DNA of 64,000 bases from Trichosphaerium sp. ATCC 40318 (taxonomy: Eukaryota; Protista; Tubulinea), in the NCBI GenBank assembly GCA_038496445.1, contig JALMLS010000030.1, positions 136,516-200,515 on the forward strand, read 5' to 3'. The translations under genes and the position numbers were made by a program. Under the pieces are notes generated by a model. The model was not told where the DNA came from, did not search any database, and worked only from the letters and a program-made list of their open reading frames with translations. This document shows, piece by piece, positions 10,787 to 28,515 of the stretch; position 1 is the first letter of the stretch; every line of letters begins with the position of its first letter.

Positions 10787-11224
10787 TTGTTTGAAGGCGA
10801 ACTTGTGAAGCATGGTACTTTCAAACAATGGTACAGATGTAAGAACTCACCACTTAAGTTTGAAGGACAATTTATAGATGGTAAGCCAATAGGAGAACAT
10901 ATATCATACTTTCCAGGTGGTAGAGTAAAATCACATTGTATCTTTACAAAGCATGGTATAAAAGATAAGAAAAAAAGAAGAAACATTGGTGTATATAAGT
11001 CATACTTTCACACAGGTGAAGTTAAGTCAATATATCATTATAAAAATGGATCACTTAGTGGAACTTTTGAATCTTGGTATATAAATGGTTCTAAGCATGA
11101 AAGTGGTAGTTATCTTTATGGTAAGAAGGAAGGGATATGGGAAAGATGGAGTAGAACTGGACATCAAACTGGAAAAGCAAAGTTTAGTTTTGGTAGATTT
11201 ATACCAGGAGGTGCGCATCACTAA
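10787..11224 (+). CDS. MORN-variant (YwqK-like) repeat protein; 5' exon(s) not resolved
   Basis: Repeated G.F..WY..G.....G.Y..GK..G units; acceptor ctaaag immediately upstream. Confidence 0.7.
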   Translation: MFEGELVKHGTFKQWYRCKNSPLKFEGQFIDGKPIGEHISYFPGGRVKSHCIFTKHGIKDKKKRRNIGVYKSYFHTGEVKSIYHYKNGSLSGTFESWYINGSKHESGSYLYGKKEGIWERWSRTGHQTGKAKFSFGRFIPGGAHH

Positions 11225-11623: not shown

Positions 11624-14600
11624 TCGGCTTACTGAGAAAATACAAACGAATTTACCATTCAATCAAGTATTATGTTACAGCAAACAAGCGTTTTGAAGCT
11701 ATAGTCGTAGCTCTACTGATGACAAGTCTTATGTACTTGCATCAAATTTATAACGAATAGTATCAACAACTCCACACTGTCACAAGCTTTTGAAAGTTGA
11801 TCAGTGAGTAATTATACCACTTCTAAGACGAAGAGATATCTATGTGCAAGTTAATGCCTAACGCCTTCTTTAAATGATCTGTAATCTTCTATTTCAAACA
11901 CCAACGCCGACACCAGACCAAAAGCAGCAAGTCACAGCAAACACCCCCAAAAATATGTAAATAAGACTTTTTATACTACAATTGTATACACATGGAGTCC
12001 CTCTCTGCACATTAACACTCTCGAGACAGTGAACTTTGTTTCATCTGACGCCTAATAACAAACAGTTGCGAATCTTCCTACTACTATTACATATTAATCC
12101 TAACGTATTAACAATACAATGCAGTCCAATCGTAATAACAACAAACATATGAGAGTGTTTTCATTGAATAGCGCATCGGGTATTCATCGGACAAACTTTA
12201 AGCATCACGTGACACACTTGTCAGTATTCAATGAATCAAATCCTCGAGACTTCTCGTCAAACCTTTCATTTAGAACATTCGTTATATATTTGTCGACACG
12301 TGATTTTACGTTGTACAAACAATATTCGGAGATGTAAACGCTCCACTAACCTCTTAAAAGTCAAAAAAAAAGAGACTTCAATACTATTGGCGAGATGTAG
12401 TACTGCGGAGCGTATAGATGAACCTAATAATGTATTTGAGCCGAACGTTAAAATGTAAACCTATAATTAAACCGTTTCTAATTTATGTAGAAGTAGGGTG
12501 TTCTTTCAGCGCCTTTTTTGTGTTTGAGATCAAAAATCCTCGTCAAATCACGCAAAAAAACGATCCGAGATTATGCGTGATGAAGTAGTGCAGATTCGTG
12601 CGACAAAGGTGCGGCGTAGTAAAGCAAGGTAGCTTTACAATATATGTTTCTTGCAGGTTGTTTGGGATGATACAATTAGGCCCGGAGCTCACACAATGAT
12701 TCACATCAAGAATGTCAATCGTGGTCAAAACCACGAATAAATTAAACAAACGAACCAAACCAACAACAGCAACAAGTGAAACATGAATAGAAGTACAATC
12801 TTAGTTGTAATATGCACGCGTACGTATAATCAGAAGGCTTCTATATTGATTTTCTGCTGTTTTTTTCTTGTTATAATGTGGGAGTAACATAATTGTCTTT
12901 CTAGTTTTTGTAATGGCATTTGCCCAGTATGAACCTGAGATTTGTGATAGATGCTTGGACTGTAATATCACACCCTGCTTTAATGCAGGAGATGATTGCT
13001 ATCAAAGGGTAATGGGTGGTGAGTGTTGGAGAATAGGAACCGACCATGTAGATAGAAACAGTACGTGCGGTTTTTTGTTTGTTTTTGAATTATATTAAAT
13101 CAACATCACGTGGCTACGGTTTTGGTATTTTATAAGACTAAGTGCTTTATTTGTTGTTTCTGATACATTTATGCAAGTCGATATGGAAAGGGATTTATCA
13201 TATCCTTGTATTTTTATCGAGCCGGGTGTTCAATTTTATGGCACCATTACTGGAACGAATGGGGATGACTGTCTCATCCTTGAAGAGGGTGCCGAGCTGT
13301 ATTCACAAGTAGATCTAAAAGGAGGGAATGACTATGTATTAATGGCACCAGGTAGTTACCACGACGGAGACATGGTAATGGGTACGTTACTTGCGTTGCT
13401 GCTTTAGTGTTTTTTGTGTTTTTGAACACAGAATATAACCTTTTGATACAGGAGGTGGTGATGATTGTCATATTGGTATAGTTTATCAAACAGGTGATAT
13501 AAATACAGGATCTGGAAATGATGCTATTTTTTCTTTTGGGCGTGCTTTAGGGTAAAGTATTTTTATTGTTCATCATAACCAAGTTGCTAATATTGTACCT
13601 TTAGGAATGAAGAATTCCGTATGGGAAGTGGTGATGATTGTTTGCTATTTAATATTGATCCTGGTCTCCTTGAACCATCTGGTAAGAAGAAAAGAGATGG
13701 AAGTATGACATTACGTGACTTGGGTGCTAGTACGTTTTCTTTCTTTTTTTTTTTTTTTTGGCGTTTTTCATGAAGAAACAAAATCACTGTCTTCAATTAA
13801 CGTTTGTTTTCTTTCTTCATGTACTAAGACACCTTTCCATAGTTGCTCAAGACGATTCCCCTATGGATAATTATTTCAGGATGATGATCAAAGAAGGACT
13901 AAATTATCAACAACAAAACAGTAAACGAAATGAGGAACTAAGAATTAAAAATAATAATACCAAACCTGCTCATAAACGTTCCACTGAGGGAGGTACTGGC
14001 ATTGGTGATGTTTTTCTTAATGCTGGAAATGATTGCGTACTATATACTGATATGGCCGTCTTTGGACAAACAAGAGGTATGCACAGACATATATTCTTAA
14101 TTTTTTCTTATCATGTAAAAAAAAAACCTTTTGTGTTCTCTACAGTTCCATACATTCACATCATACATTTTTACCCTTAAAAAAAACACTTTTTTTGAAT
14201 AAGCAACCTAAAAAGCAAGGCGTTTCTGTGGTGGGGGTTAAAAAAAAGCGAAGAATTTGAAGTGTAACATTTGAAATCACTTTTTCAAAATACTCTCTCC
14301 AAAGTTTACTAGCCATATTCATTCTACTGTGTAATTATGAGTTAAGACTTTATTTAGCGGGAAGCGGAGATGATTGTGTTCAGGGATATGATTTTGTATT
14401 GGGTGACAACATCATTGCTGGGTCAGGTGATGATGTTATAGATATTTTGGACTGGGGTATTATCTACAACGATAATTTACGTTTCCTTGGTGGTTTAGGA
14501 GATGATACTATTTTTGTTCGTATTGATAACTATCCGCCACCTACTCGTCGCCACGAGATTAACGGAGGAGGTGATACAGATTTTTGTTGCAGCAGATATT

Positions 14601-14963
14601 TCGCACCAACAACGGACCCAACAACAGCGCCAGTTAAGAGACAGGAAGGATATGGTGGTCCTCCTATGGCTGTTGATATCATAAGAGGATGTGAAGAGCT
14701 TTGTACTATGCCTACATCTACACCTACGCCTCCTTGATTCTAGCTTTTTTTTTGTTTTCTCTTTGACTTGATTTTTTACAGACTTGTTAGTTGTCAAACA
14801 AAAAAATCTGCAACATAGATAAAATAAAACGTTTTACATATTACAACCTGGATTCCAGTACTTGTTTTGTCATTTTTGTTTTTCTGTTCATTTTGCTTCA
14901 AGAGATTATGGTGTGCAATAACTAAGAAAAAACCGAGATTGTGTCATATCTTGTTTTTTTGCT
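11624..14963 (+). repeat. Copy A of a ~3-kb inverted segmental duplication (partner 25562-28515)
   Basis: Direct comparison shows near-identical non-coding and intron sequence; segments at about 12572-12733 and 14129-14285 occur only in copy A. Confidence 0.95.
12783..14737 (+). CDS. Secreted Cys-rich protein with RTX/hemolysin-type Ca2+-binding GxGxD repeats (7 exons), copy A
   Basis: Signal peptide MNRSTILVVICTLFVMAFA; repeats GTNGDDC, KGGNDY, GGGDDC, GSGNDA, GSGDDC, NAGNDC, GSGDDV, GGLGDDT, GGGDTD; GT-AG introns. Confidence 0.8.
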
Positions 14964-15117
14964 TATCTCTTACAGAGGTATTACTCCAAACAATTGTTTT
15001 GTACATTTTAATTTAATTTATTACAGAAAAAAAAAAGAGAATTGTAATCTTCTACATCGCGATAAAGACTTCTTTTCTACCAAGTTCCAGATCCAAAGAA
15101 CAAAGGTTATTGTCTCT

Positions 15118-24972: not shown

Positions 24973-25561
24973 AATACTGAAAATGTCAACAATAACTAAT
25001 AAGATTATTTTTGAACAAATGACCTGTCTTGTTCTTTGAAGGGCACTAAATTAATTCCATGAATTGATTTGCAACTTCATAGTTAGATCTGTTAATGGCT
25101 CGGTCTCAGACCTCTCTTAAGCTTAGTTGAGTCAACAGGTGTCTGGCCAAACTGAATTGGTCCTAAAAAAAAACACGTGCAACTAATATGACAGTTATAC
25201 ACGAGCAACGTATTTCAACCAACTTGACCTTTATATCCACAATGGCTGTACACGCGTTTTCTCCATTACAGACGTTTGGGTAAGACTTGGTATGACTCAC
25301 ATAAATCAACTACAAACGCCGACAACGTGTATACAGAACATGGCGAGCAGCAATCACCCACATCCCACCGAAAAATTTCCTTTTCAATTTGATTTAAAAT
25401 ACTGTAAAACTTTCTTTTATTTCCAAGTGTTTCTTGTATAATATAACAAATGCTTGGCGCTGCGCTAGAGCCACAAGATATTTTGTCTTTCTCCCAACAT
25501 CGTCTAAAGTTGATTCCTTGGTTAGTTGATAGAAGAGTAGTATTAGTGGTATAACTCTTAT

Positions 25562-28515
25562 TAGCAACAAAACAAGATATTTACAATCTCGGTTTTTTCT
25601 TACTTATTGCGCACCGTAATCTCTGATCAGTCTGCTAGATATGAAGCAAAATGAACAGAAAAACAAAAATGACAAAACAAGTACTGTAATCCAGGTTGTA
25701 ATATGTAAAACGTTTTATTTTATCTATGGGTTGCAGATTTTTTTGTTTGACAACGAGTCATGTAAAAATCAAGTCAAAGAGAAAACAAAAAAAGCTAGAA
25801 TCAAGGAGGCGTAGGTGTAGATGTAGGCATAGTACAAAGCTCTTCACATCCTCTTATGATATCAACAGCCATAGGAGGACCACCATATCCTTCCTGTCTC
25901 TTAACTGGCGCTGTTGTTGGGTCCGTTATTGGTGCGAAATATCTGCTGCAACAAAAATCTGTATCACCTCCTCCGTTAATCTCGTGGCGACGAGTAGGTG
26001 AAGGATCCTCATCAATACGAACAAAAATAGTATCATCTCCTAAACCACCAAGGAAACGTAAATTATCGTTGTAGACAATACCCCAGTCCAAAATATCTAC
26101 AACATCATCACCTGACCCAGCAATGATATTGTCACCCAATGCAAAATCATATCCCTGAACACAATCATCTCCGCTTCCCGCTAAATAAAGTCTTTAACTC
26201 ATTATTGCATTGTAGAATGAATATGGCCCTAGTAAACTTTGGAGAGAGTATTTTGCGCGGTTTTTTAACATGATAAGAAAAAATTAAGAATATATGTCTG
26301 TGCATACCTCTTGTTTGTCCAAAGACGGCCATATCAGTATATACTACACAATCATTTCCAGCATTAAGAAAAACATCACCAATGCCAGTACCTCCCTCAG
26401 TGGAACGTTTATGAGCAGGTTTGGTATTATTATTTTTAATTCTTAGTTCCTCATTTCGTTTACTGTTTTGTTGTTGATAATTTAGTCCTTCTTTAATCAT
26501 CATCCTGAAATAATTATCCATAGGGGAATCGTCTTGAGCAACTATGGAAAGGTGTCTTAGTACATGAAGAAAAGAAAATAAACGTTAATTGAAGACAGTA
26601 ATTTTTGTTTCTGTTCATGAAAATCGCCCAAAAAAAAAAAAAGATCACGTACTAGCACCCAAGTCACGTAATGTCATACTTCCATCTCTTTTCTTCTTAT
26701 CAGATTGTCCAAAGAGCTCAAAATCAATATTAAATAGCAAACAATCATCACCACTTCCCATACGGAATTCTTCATTCCTAAAGGTACAATATTAGCAACT
26801 TGGTTATGATGAACAATAAAAATACTTACCCTGTAATACGCTCAAAAGAAAAAATAGCATCATTTCCAGATCCTGTATTTATATCACCTGTTTGATGATT
26901 AAAACCAATATGACAATCATCACCACCTCCTGTATCAAAAGGTTATATTCTGTGTTCAAAAACACAAAAAACACTAAAGCAGCAACGCAAGTAACGTACC
27001 CATTACCATATCTCCTTCGTGGTAACTACCTGGAACCATTACTACATTGTCATTCCCTCCTTTTAGATCTACTTGTGAATACAGCTCGGCACCAAATTCA
27101 AGGATGAGACAGTCATCCCCATTCGTTCCAGTAATGGTGCCATAAAATTGAACACCCGGCTCGATGAGAATACAAGGATATGATAAATCCCTTTCCATAT
27201 CGACTTGCATAAATGTATCAGAAACAACAAATAAAGCACTTAGTCTTATAAAATACCAAACCGTAGCCACATGATGTTGATGTAAAAAAAAAAAAAAAAA
27301 CACAAAAAACTGCACGTACTGTTTCTATCTACATGGTCGGTTCCTATTATCCAACACTCACCAGCTGTTACCCTTTGAAAGCAATCCTCTCCTGTTTCAA
27401 AGCAGGATGTGATATCACAGTCCAAGCATCTATCACAAATCTCAGGTTCATACTGGGCAAATGCCATTACAAAAACTAGAAAGACAATTATGTTACTTCC
27501 ACATTATAACAAGAAAAAAACAGCAGAAAATTAATATAGAAGCCTTCTGATTATACGTACGCGTGCATAGCACAACTAAGATTGTACTTCTATTCATATT
27601 TCACTTGTTGCTGTTGTTGGTTTGGTTCGTTTGTTTAATTTATTCGGGTGATCTCGGATGGTTTTTTTGCGTGATTTGACGAGGATTTTTTGAATCTCAA
27701 ACACAAAAAAGGCGCTGAAAGAACACCCTACTTCTACATAAATTAGAAACGGTTTAACACAAGGTTTACATTTTAACGTTCGGCTCAAATACATTATTAG
27801 GTTCATCTATACGCTCCGCAGTACTACATCTCGCCAATAGTATTGAAGTCTCTTTTTTTTTTGACTTTTAAGAGGTTAGTGGAGCGTTTACATCTCCGAA
27901 TATTGTTTGTACAACGTAAAATCACGTGTCGACAATATATAACGAATGTTCTAAATGAAAGGTTTGACGAGAAGTCTCGAGGATTTGATTCATTGAATAC
28001 TGACAAGTGTGTCACGTGATGCTTAAAGTTTGTCCGATGAATACCCGATGCGCTATTCAATGAAAACACTCTCTGTATTTCACATGTTTGTTGTTATTAG
28101 GCTTCCAGATGAAACAAAGTCCACTGAATAGTCTGGAGAGCATTAATGTGTATACAATACAATGTCTTATTTACATATTTTTGGGGTGTTTGCTGTTTGA
28201 CTTGCTGCTTTTGCTGGTCTAGTGTTGGCGTTGGTGTTTGAAATAAAAGATTACAAATCATTTAACGAAGACTAAAGCATTACCTTGCGCACACAGATAT
28301 CTCTTGGTCTTAGAAGTGGTATAATTACTCACTAATCAACTTTTAACACTTGTGACAATGTGTGGAGTTGTTGATACTATTCGTTATAAATTTGATGCAA
28401 GTACATAAGACTTGGCATCAGTAGAGCTACGACTGTAGCTTCAAAATGCTTGTTTGCTGTAACATAATATGTGATTGAATGGTAAATTCGTTTGTATTTT
28501 CTCAGAGTAAGCCGA
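25562..28515 (-). repeat. Copy B of the inverted segmental duplication (partner 11624-14963)
   Basis: Reverse complement aligns to copy A from tcggcttac...gagaaaatacaaacg through aaccgagattgt. Confidence 0.95.
25801..27597 (-). CDS. Secreted RTX-like GxGxD-repeat protein, copy B
   Basis: Same exon structure as 12783-14737; ATG at 27597; ends CTMPTSTPTPP*. Confidence 0.8.

What the first reader, a model, noticed from the sequence alone, without database searches (positions are those of the whole stretch)
12783..14737. Secreted RTX-like beta-roll pair with hypervariable residues at a fixed repeat register
Seen: introns and some exons are near-identical between the copies, yet multi-base non-synonymous changes cluster right after the GxGxD-strand units: LEEG/LEFG, DYVLMAP/DNVVMVP, IGIVYQ/IGFNHQ, SFGRALG/SFERITG, IDPGLLEPSG/IDFELFGQSD, IDNYPP/IDEDPS. 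The Cys-rich N-terminus also varies (NITPCFNAGDDCY/DITSCFETGEDCF). Established: RTX nonapeptides form Ca2+ beta-rolls and are mainly bacterial. Inference: a eukaryotic, intron-bearing, Cys-laddered beta-roll under diversifying selection on one face, analogous to variable LRR receptors; a candidate undescribed recognition, adhesion or toxin family.
Basis: partly seen in the sequence, partly recalled or inferred. Interest (0 to 1): 0.75.

Follow-up and report, generated by a model that had tools for sequence, protein, structure and literature searches.

The report
Fast-evolving secreted calcium-coil protein gene pair
A marine amoeba carries two near-identical, oppositely oriented genes for a secreted coil-shaped protein of a bacterial calcium-binding type, and the copies differ mainly in one loop of each coil, as expected of a family of binding proteins that is diversifying, although what they bind is unknown.

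Summary
Window 12783-14737 (+) and 27597-25801 (-) are two intact seven-exon genes inside a 3.3-kb inverted duplication in the Trichosphaerium sp. genome. Each gene encodes about 411 aa: a signal peptide, a 6-Cys cap, and a beta-solenoid of about ten 19-24-residue coils with one GxG(D/N)D turn each. Models and motif place it nearest the RTX-variant solenoid of the Marinomonas antifreeze adhesin. It does not reach Pfam's RTX threshold, and no real homologue turned up in 1.84 billion protein clusters.

Three tandem paralogs lie on another contig, and the first two-coil module matches at least 75 places in this genome. The A/B differences are clustered (P<5e-5). They sit 5-11 residues after each calcium-type turn (20/91 versus 4/80) and in the Cys cap.

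Pairwise dN/dS is only 1.25-1.37 and not significant. Introns are not all near-identical (0-8.6%). Family-wide site models favour positive selection (LRT 45-53), but the LRT falls to 9.9 (p=0.007) once multi-nucleotide changes are modelled.

Verdict: a real, undescribed, lineage-restricted family, probably binding proteins with variable loops. The selection evidence is moderate.

The parts
12783..14737 (+). Copy A gene, 7 exons: 12783-12819, 12905-13060, 13178-13381, 13452-13551, 13605-13729, 13843-14076, 14358-14737. The CDS is 1236 nt (411 aa plus stop).
   Evidence: Reading of the sequence. All borders are AG/GT with phases 1,1,1,2,1,1, conserved in five paralogs.
25801..27597 (-). Copy B gene, 7 exons on the minus strand: 27597-27561, 27475-27320, 27203-27000, 26929-26830, 26777-26653, 26541-26308, 26180-25801.
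   Evidence: Alignment to A, splice sites and open frames, and ORF 25801-26139.
11624..14966 (+). Left arm of the inverted duplication: upstream region, gene A and the 3' flank.
   Evidence: blastn of the window against itself gives 84.7-95.8% identity to 28515-25560.
25560..28515 (-). Right arm of the inverted duplication: gene B and its flanks.
12907..13059 (+). Exon 2 in-frame part: the end of the signal peptide plus the 6-Cys N-terminal cap (C-x2-C-x2-C-x4-C-x6-C-x9-C). This is the most variable exon between A and B (9 of 51 residues; Nd 10.5 versus Sd 0.5), and all Cys are kept.
13180..13728 (+). Exons 3-5: the first half of the solenoid, five coils each with a GxG(D/N)D turn. The variable patches lie at residues E/F, Y-L-A/N-V-V, IVY/FNH, G-AL/E-IT and PG-LEP-G/FE-FGQ-D.
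   Evidence: The AF2 model of exon 3 has pLDDT 91 with a strand-turn-strand-loop coil pattern.
13684..13979 (+). Conserved internal linker between the two solenoid halves. It is bounded by dibasic sites KKKR (13684-13695) and KR (13974-13979) and spans intron 5.
   Evidence: Both sites are invariant in all five paralogs. Cleavage there is an inference only.
14360..14734 (+). Exon 7: four more coils (GSGDD, GSGDD, GLGDD, GGGDTD-CC), a Pro/Thr linker, a KR site (14636-14641) and a conserved Cys-x3-Cys tail.
   Evidence: The AF2 model has pLDDT 61 overall and 70-83 in the coils.
14124..14285 (+). A 162-bp insertion in intron 6 of copy A only. It is a member of a small dispersed repeat.
   Evidence: It appears as a gap in the A/B alignment, and five other genomic copies exist at 74-80% identity.
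12572..12733 (+). A 162-bp segment about 50 bp upstream of A's ATG that is absent from B. Because it is conserved upstream of paralog C3, it is a deletion in B.

Best explanation
The two genes are young paralogs in the amoeba Trichosphaerium sp. Each encodes a secreted protein whose core is a calcium-type beta-solenoid. Each 19-24-residue coil has one conserved GxG(D/N)D turn of the kind that binds Ca2+ in RTX proteins, then a short strand, a four-residue corner loop, and a longer strand. The conserved turns, the hydrophobic strand residues and the cysteines would form a rigid scaffold. The corner loops on the edge opposite the calcium turns, together with the 6-Cys N-terminal cap, carry most of the differences. 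I read the family as extracellular binding or recognition proteins. New specificities would arise by gene duplication followed by selection on those loops, against prey, microbes, viruses or other cells. In this respect it would work like variable leucine-rich-repeat receptors, on a different fold. Shown here: the gene structure, the family, the fold class, where the variation lies, and the elevated non-synonymous rate. Inferred: calcium binding, secretion, a binding function, and that the variation is adaptive.
For: Five intact paralogs share exon structure and framework residues. The exon-3 model has pLDDT 91 and superposes on the MpAFP Ca-bound solenoid at 1.5 A over 54 aa. The top five structural neighbours of the exon-7 model, out of 48,161 chains, are all RTX or MpAFP solenoids, Z 6.4-8.1. 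23 of 30 ESM-Atlas neighbours are HemolysinCabind clusters. The coil consensus resembles the published MpAFP repeat xGTGNDxuxuGGxuxGxux (PMC3492233). A/B differences are clustered, fall at a fixed coil offset, and coincide with sites that vary independently among the three other paralogs (odds ratio 4.0, p=2e-4). At those sites A/B pN is 0.089 against pS 0.024 (binomial p=0.034). The M1a/M2a LRT is 45-53 on the 5-taxon tree in all three topologies, and 15-52 on topology-free trios. Null simulations gave a maximum of 5.2. The test is still significant with multi-hit rates (LRT 9.9, p=0.007, omega 2.4 at 25% of sites). None of the five close paralogs could serve as a donor of any patch.
Against: Gene-wide A/B dN/dS is 1.25-1.37 and not significant (p=0.29). 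Most of the likelihood signal disappears when double and triple nucleotide changes are allowed. Non-coding differences are also clustered, so a clustered mutation process may contribute. The tandem paralogs are mosaics, with site support of 20:17:16 for the three groupings. There are no expression data, no ligand, and no coordinates to measure surface exposure. The exon-7 model is of moderate confidence, and both Foldseek searches were non-significant. The full-length spliced protein was neither searched nor folded.
Confidence: 0.5

Rival explanations
1. Same protein and fold, but the variation is not adaptive. The corner loops and the cap are simply unconstrained, and a clustered, multi-nucleotide mutation or repair process, or short conversion tracts, produces the patches.
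For: Adding double and triple-hit rates improves the null model by 41.7 lnL units and cuts the selection LRT from 45.1 to 9.9. Non-coding differences are also clustered (19 versus 7.3 expected). Pairwise omega is not above 1 with significance. The tandem paralogs are mosaic.
Against: The selection LRT remains significant (p=0.007), with omega 2.4. Exon 4 has 10/96 differences between introns 3 and 4, which have 0/122 (Fisher p=2e-4). dN (0.049) exceeds clean non-coding divergence (0.023). Non-coding clusters lie mostly in T-runs and indel zones, which exons lack. The same sites vary in independent lineages.
Confidence: 0.25
2. The proteins act in calcite spicule formation or attachment. The row of Ca2+-loaded GxG(D/N)D turns, spaced one coil apart, would bind or template a crystal face, much as the same row in the Marinomonas antifreeze protein binds ice. 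The variable loops would be irrelevant to that function.
For: Trichosphaerium builds a coat of calcite spicules (PMC11575492). The proteins are secreted, acidic at the turns, and structurally closest in coil geometry to a crystal-binding solenoid. The calcium-turn side is the invariant side. Some superfamily members are fused to mucin-like Pro/Thr stalks.
Against: There is no direct link to spicules. A large, fast-diversifying family is not what a lattice-matching face needs. The cultured strain's spicule state is unknown to me. The idea rests on analogy only.
Confidence: 0.1
3. They are secreted toxins or antimicrobial effectors used on prey or competitors, processed at the conserved dibasic sites into active fragments.
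For: The proteins are secreted and Cys-rich, belong to a rapidly evolving multigene family, and carry conserved KKKR/KR/(R)KR sites. RTX solenoids occur in many bacterial toxins (PMC3034196).
Against: No hydrophobic, pore-forming or enzymatic domain was seen in any exon. In RTX toxins the solenoid is the folding and receptor-binding part, not the toxic part.
Confidence: 0.08
4. The family is a recent horizontal acquisition of a bacterial RTX gene.
For: The genome is reported to hold many bacterial and giant-virus genes (PMC10521059). The only outside matches are bacterial RTX-type proteins.
Against: Those matches are motif-level only: E 8e-10 and 5e-4 across 14 and 6 short stretches, and 42% identity over 54 aa. 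The genes have six spliceosomal introns at conserved positions, a eukaryotic signal peptide, host-like GC and dozens of diverged paralogs. No viral or metagenome relative was found.
Confidence: 0.03

Closest known systems
Region IV of the Marinomonas primoryensis antifreeze adhesin (MpAFP/MpIBP RIV, PDB 3P4G)
   Same: Both are beta-solenoids with one Ca-type turn per 19-21-residue coil. The published consensus xGTGNDxuxuGGxuxGxux (PMC3492233) compares with G-T/S-x-G-D/N-D-C-u-x-u-x-x-G-A-x-u-x-G-x-u here. Model superposition gives rmsd 1.5 A over 54 aa for exon 3 and Z 6.9, rmsd 2.7 A over 93 aa for exon 7.
   Different: MpAFP RIV is bacterial, secreted by type I secretion, part of a 1.5-MDa adhesin, without cysteines, and its functional face is the conserved Ca/Thr/Asx row. 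The family here is eukaryotic and intron-bearing, with a signal peptide, a Cys after most turns, a 6-Cys cap, an internal dibasic-flanked linker, and variable loops on the other edge. No sequence-level match was found.
Classical RTX beta-roll (Pfam PF00353 HemolysinCabind; e.g. the Bordetella CyaA RTX blocks and serralysin)
   Same: The GGxG(N/D)D turn motif followed by a hydrophobic strand is shared. The best structural neighbours are CyaA RTX blocks IV-V at Z 8.1 and 7usl at Z 7.9. The ESM neighbours agree.
   Different: In the classical roll the motif recurs every 9 residues, so both edges bind Ca2+. Here it recurs every 19-24 residues and the second edge is a variable loop. The Pfam score stays below the cut-off (7-20 bits against 23). 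There is no type I secretion signal context.
Variable leucine-rich-repeat receptors (for example lamprey VLRs and plant NLR LRR domains)
   Same: The working principle is shared: a solenoid with conserved framework positions and hypervariable residues at a fixed position of every coil, in a multigene family with signs of positive selection. This is my own knowledge, not tested here.
   Different: The fold and motif are unrelated, and there is no somatic assembly. Here diversity is between germline paralogs only, and no binding function is shown.

Membership tests
RTX / HemolysinCabind (PF00353) | Score at or above Pfam's gathering cut-off (23 bits) | tested here: not met
   Exon 7 of A scores 7.2 bits, E 6.6. 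Distant paralog exons score 15-20 bits, E 8e-4 to 0.02. The test was run exon by exon only; the joined protein was not scanned.
RTX / HemolysinCabind (PF00353) | Tandem nonapeptides GGxGxDxUx, i.e. a Ca-binding turn every 9 residues | tested here: not met
   Successive GxG(D/N)D anchors are 19-24 residues apart. The intervening half-coil is a non-motif loop.
RTX / HemolysinCabind (PF00353) | Parallel beta-roll/solenoid fold | tested here: met
   The AF2 models are all-beta with a coil pattern. The top VIA neighbours are RTX solenoids at Z 6.4-8.1. Foldseek was non-significant, although its top rows are the same families.
RTX / HemolysinCabind (PF00353) | Ca2+ bound in the turns; Ca-dependent folding | not testable with these tools
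   The Asp/Asn/Gly ligand pattern is conserved: the last D is invariant in 9 of 9 coils. No metal was modelled.
RTX / HemolysinCabind (PF00353) | Bacterial type I secretion context (C-terminal signal, ABC/MFP/OMP genes) | tested here: not met
   This is a eukaryotic nuclear gene with six introns and an N-terminal signal-peptide-like sequence.
MpAFP RIV-type 19-21-residue Ca-bound solenoid | Coil of 19-21 residues with one xGTGND turn and alternating hydrophobic strand positions | tested here: met
   Coil lengths are 19-24. The consensus across 33 genomic modules resembles the published one.
MpAFP RIV-type 19-21-residue Ca-bound solenoid | Detectable sequence homology | tested here: not met
   The exon-7 profile found nothing in PDB sequences at E up to 10, and only two motif-level hits in 1.84 billion clusters.
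MpAFP RIV-type 19-21-residue Ca-bound solenoid | Structural superposition of coils | tested here: met
   Against 3p4g: rmsd 1.5 A over 54 aa (Z 4.7), and rmsd 2.7 A over 93 aa (Z 6.9). Z is modest because the fragments are small.
Diversity-generating retroelement target | Template repeat plus reverse transcriptase nearby; changes only at template adenines | tested here: not met
   The window holds no second copy of the patches other than the paralog itself. The substitutions are of all kinds, for example GAG/TTT, CCT/TTT and GGT/GAG. No reverse transcriptase was searched for.

The most novel reading that the evidence does not exclude
Trichosphaerium encodes a large germline repertoire, with at least 75 module matches genome-wide, of secreted calcium-solenoid proteins. 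These would serve as a recognition system for prey, microbes, giant viruses or fusion partners, with specificity set by one hypervariable loop per coil. That would be an independent invention of the variable-solenoid-receptor principle on an RTX-type fold in a protist. A second possibility is that the calcium-turn row binds calcite during spicule building.
Probability: 0.3. Interest if true: 0.75.

Novelty: new variant of a known kind. Interest (0 to 1): 0.55.

Why it matters
Calcium-type RTX solenoids are regarded as a bacterial device linked to type I secretion. Here the same architecture appears in a eukaryote. It has introns and a classical signal peptide, it has added cysteines, it has expanded to dozens of genes, and it shows no detectable relatives elsewhere. 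If the variable loops are a binding surface, this would be another independent case of a solenoid used as a diversifiable recognition scaffold, in a group (Amoebozoa) whose extracellular recognition is poorly known. The pair is also a clean small test case for how far multi-nucleotide changes inflate positive-selection tests. In this data set the signal dropped from LRT 45 to 10.

Tried and rejected
1. Pfam on every exon of A and on long exons of distant members gave nothing above cut-off.
2. The exon-7 profile against PDB sequences gave no hit.
3. The big HMMER search with the exon-7 profile gave only two motif-level bacterial repeat proteins.
4. The word-index search with the 33-sequence module alignment gave none. 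It sees only proteins of 37-117 aa.
5. Viral contigs and JGI metagenomes gave none.
6. Prokaryote genomes gave one ordinary RTX locus.
7. Foldseek on both models was non-significant.
8. Patch donation by gene conversion from the three other close paralogs is rejected, because the patch DNA matches none of them as a block.
9. A misassembled allele pair is rejected, because the copies are inverted and 11 kb apart on one contig with different flanks.
10. A diversity-generating retroelement is rejected (see the membership test).
11. One simulation run failed for technical reasons and was repeated.
12. Searches and folds of the joined (spliced) protein were left out, because a spliced model has no reference here. 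Everything was done exon by exon.
Full report
ORGANISM AND LOCUS. The window is AT-rich (GC 34-39%) and its genes carry spliceosomal introns. The assembly has 70.28 Mb in 642 contigs. Its contig C1 is 1,255,013 bp long, exactly the longest-scaffold length given for the Trichosphaerium sp. draft genome (70.87 Mb, GC 37.7%; PMC10521059). Trichosphaerium is a marine amoeba that can build a coat of calcite spicules (PMC11575492).

THE OBSERVATION. A blastn of the region against the window found a second copy on the minus strand. A global alignment and a wider self-comparison show an inverted duplication of about 3.3 kb, 11624-14966 versus 28515-25560.

Copy A has seven exons: 12783-12819, 12905-13060, 13178-13381, 13452-13551, 13605-13729, 13843-14076 and 14358-14737. 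This gives 1236 nt, or 411 codons plus stop. Copy B has the same structure on the other strand. All borders are GT-AG with the same phases.

In 1215 in-frame exon bases there are 55 differences and 36 amino-acid changes (35 of the 387 codon columns without gaps in all five paralogs). Twelve codons carry two or three changes, against 2.4 expected. Thirty-one neighbouring differences lie within 6 nt, against 13.1 expected (both P<5e-5).

The statement that introns are near-identical needs qualification:
- Introns 3 and 4 are identical (0/122).
- Introns 2 and 5 differ by about 8%, largely in T-runs.
- The overall intron figure is 26/549 = 4.7%.
- Outside homopolymer and indel zones, non-coding divergence is 12/530 = 2.3%.

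WHAT THE PROTEIN IS. All searches and folds were done exon by exon by reference. The joined spliced protein was not searched or folded, because it has no reference here. Reading the exons in order gives this layout:
- a hydrophobic N-terminus ending in an A-x-A-like site, which I read as a signal peptide by eye;
- a 6-Cys segment;
- five coils, each with a GxG(D/N)D turn (exons 3-5);
- a conserved linker of about 65 residues bounded by KKKR and KR;
- five more coils (end of exon 6 and exon 7);
- a Pro/Thr linker, another KR site, and a conserved tail with two Cys.

Pfam finds nothing significant on these exons. HemolysinCabind scores E 6.6 on exon 7 and E 8e-4 to 0.02 on exons of more distant paralogs, always below the 23-bit cut-off.

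AlphaFold2 results are as follows.
- Exon 3, with a 33-sequence alignment of genomic modules, gave pLDDT 91. Each coil reads as a Ca-type turn, a 4-residue strand, a 4-residue loop and a 7-residue strand.
- Exon 7, with 7 sequences, gave pLDDT 61 overall and 70-83 in the coils, again all-beta.
- Foldseek was non-significant for both, though the top rows for exon 7 are almost all RTX proteins.
- VIA-align against 48,161 chains put CyaA RTX blocks (Z 8.1 and 7.9), the Marinomonas antifreeze solenoid 3P4G (Z 6.9, rmsd 2.7 A over 93 aa) and an Aeromonas RTX-like domain (Z 6.4) in the first five places for exon 7.
- The same search put 3P4G third for exon 3, with the tightest fit (rmsd 1.5 A over 54 aa, Z 4.7).
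- The ESM Atlas neighbours of exon 7 are mostly HemolysinCabind clusters (23 of 30, scores 0.91-0.93).

The coil length (19-24 residues) and consensus resemble the 19-21-residue repeat xGTGNDxuxuGGxuxGxux of MpAFP region IV, which its authors describe as RTX repeats folding as a Ca2+-bound beta-solenoid (PMC3492233). So the fold class is well supported. Strict RTX membership (tandem nonapeptides, Pfam threshold, type I secretion) is not met.

FAMILY AND RELATIVES. Exon 7 finds five close genes in the genome. These are A, B and three in tandem on contig C124, all intact with the same seven exons. It also finds two distant genes on C115 and C137. A profile of the first two-coil module matches 75 places at E<=0.001, including clusters (C164) and a fusion to a mucin-like Pro/Thr region.

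Outside this genome the picture is nearly empty:
- The exon-7 profile found only two proteins among 1.84 billion cluster representatives. Both are bacterial-type repeat proteins matched through many short stretches, one of them with Calx-beta and HemolysinCabind.
- The prokaryote genome scan gave one ordinary RTX protein.
- Viral contigs, JGI metagenomes and the word-index search gave nothing.

The family is therefore lineage-restricted as far as these collections go. A recent bacterial origin is not supported. An ancient transfer or convergence cannot be told apart.

WHERE THE VARIATION LIES. I aligned nine coils on the last D of the turn. Positions -4 to +4 (turn and first strand) carry 4 A/B differences in 80 cells. 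Positions +5 to +15 carry 20 in 91 (p=0.0016), with peaks at +6, +8 and +9. In the exon-3 model these positions are the outward start of the short strand and the corner loop after it. In the exon-7 model they are the loops between strands. The edge opposite the calcium-type turns is therefore the variable one. The N-terminal Cys segment is, however, the most variable exon of the pair (Nd 10.5, Sd 0.5), with all cysteines kept.

SELECTION. For the A/B pair, dS is 0.036-0.039 and dN is 0.049, giving omega of 1.25-1.37, which is not significantly above 1. Sites that differ between A and B are the same sites that vary among the three C124 genes (odds ratio 4.0, p=2e-4). At those independently defined sites A/B pN is 0.089 against pS 0.024 (p=0.034). 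At the other sites pN is 0.029 against pS 0.042. Exon 4 has 10/96 differences between two identical introns (p=2e-4).

I wrote a Goldman-Yang codon likelihood program with models M1a and M2a.
- On 387 codons of five genes, M2a is preferred with LRT 48-53 on all three topologies, with omega about 3.5-4 at 20-24% of sites.
- The LRT is 45 after removing gap-adjacent columns, 32 on the coil region alone and 17 on the rest.
- The tandem genes are mosaics, with 20:17:16 sites supporting the three groupings. I therefore repeated the test on three-taxon sets, which have no topology, and got LRT 15-52.
- Twelve data sets simulated under the fitted null gave a maximum LRT of 5.2.
- The important caveat is this. 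When instantaneous double and triple nucleotide changes are allowed, the null model improves by 41.7 log-likelihood units and the LRT falls to 9.9 (p=0.007, omega 2.4 at 25% of sites).
- Non-coding differences are also clustered, though mostly in low-complexity zones.

Diversifying selection is thus the better-supported reading, but not a secure one.

FUNCTION. No function was tested. I commit to secreted binding or recognition proteins with a rigid calcium-stabilised scaffold and a variable loop row (0.5). The rivals are:
- neutral loop drift with clustered mutation (0.25);
- a role in calcite spicule formation through the calcium-turn row (0.1);
- a processed toxin or effector (0.08);
- recent bacterial transfer as the origin (0.03).

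EARLIER NOTES. My counts are 9.75 synonymous and 45.25 non-synonymous differences, close to the 1:3.7 ratio of sites, so that wording overstates the case. A note on another gene family of this genome that varies on one face (s1-404187) suggests the pattern may recur here. I did not test it.

Noticed in passing
L005 (C124:85948-89322), L004 (C124:89689-93141), L003 (C124:95912-99301): There are three tandem paralogs with the same seven exons. Their Pro/Thr linker holds about 9, 5 and 1 copies of a TPDPTS-like unit. Informative sites support all three pairings of these genes, with runs along the gene, which indicates gene conversion or recombination.
   Followed up: partly
window 13684-13695, 13923-13928, 13974-13979, 14636-14641: The dibasic sites KKKR, KR, KR and (R)KR are invariant in all five close paralogs. 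Two of them bracket the conserved linker between the solenoid halves, so the protein may be cut by a kexin-type protease into disulfide-held pieces. This is inference only.
   Followed up: no
window 14124-14285: A 162-bp insertion is present in intron 6 of copy A only. Five related copies lie elsewhere in the genome at 74-80% identity, so this is a small dispersed repeat.
   Followed up: partly
window 12572-12733: A 162-bp segment just upstream of A's conserved 50-bp leader is missing in B but conserved upstream of paralog C3 (C124:95565-95671). B therefore has a promoter-proximal deletion that might affect its expression.
   Followed up: partly
G000 contigs C164:74-103 kb, C251, C143, C3:575-577 kb (L020), C155 (L034): The two-coil module matches at least 75 places genome-wide. 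One cluster has at least seven matches on C164. In one gene the module follows a long PPTTEPPTT mucin-like repeat. One member has a last exon of about 170 aa holding about eight coils.
   Followed up: partly
G000 C6/C400, C155/C77, C113/C484: Pairs of contigs give identical scores for the same module matches. This suggests uncollapsed haplotypes or duplicated assembly pieces, so raw family counts are inflated.
   Followed up: no
window 12964-12972 (A) versus B: The N-I-T sequon in the Cys cap of A is D-I-T in B, so a possible N-glycosylation site differs between the copies.
   Followed up: no
window 10787-11224: An open frame encoding MORN-like repeats (YxGxWxxGxxxG pattern) lies just left of the duplicated segment. 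It was not examined.
   Followed up: no
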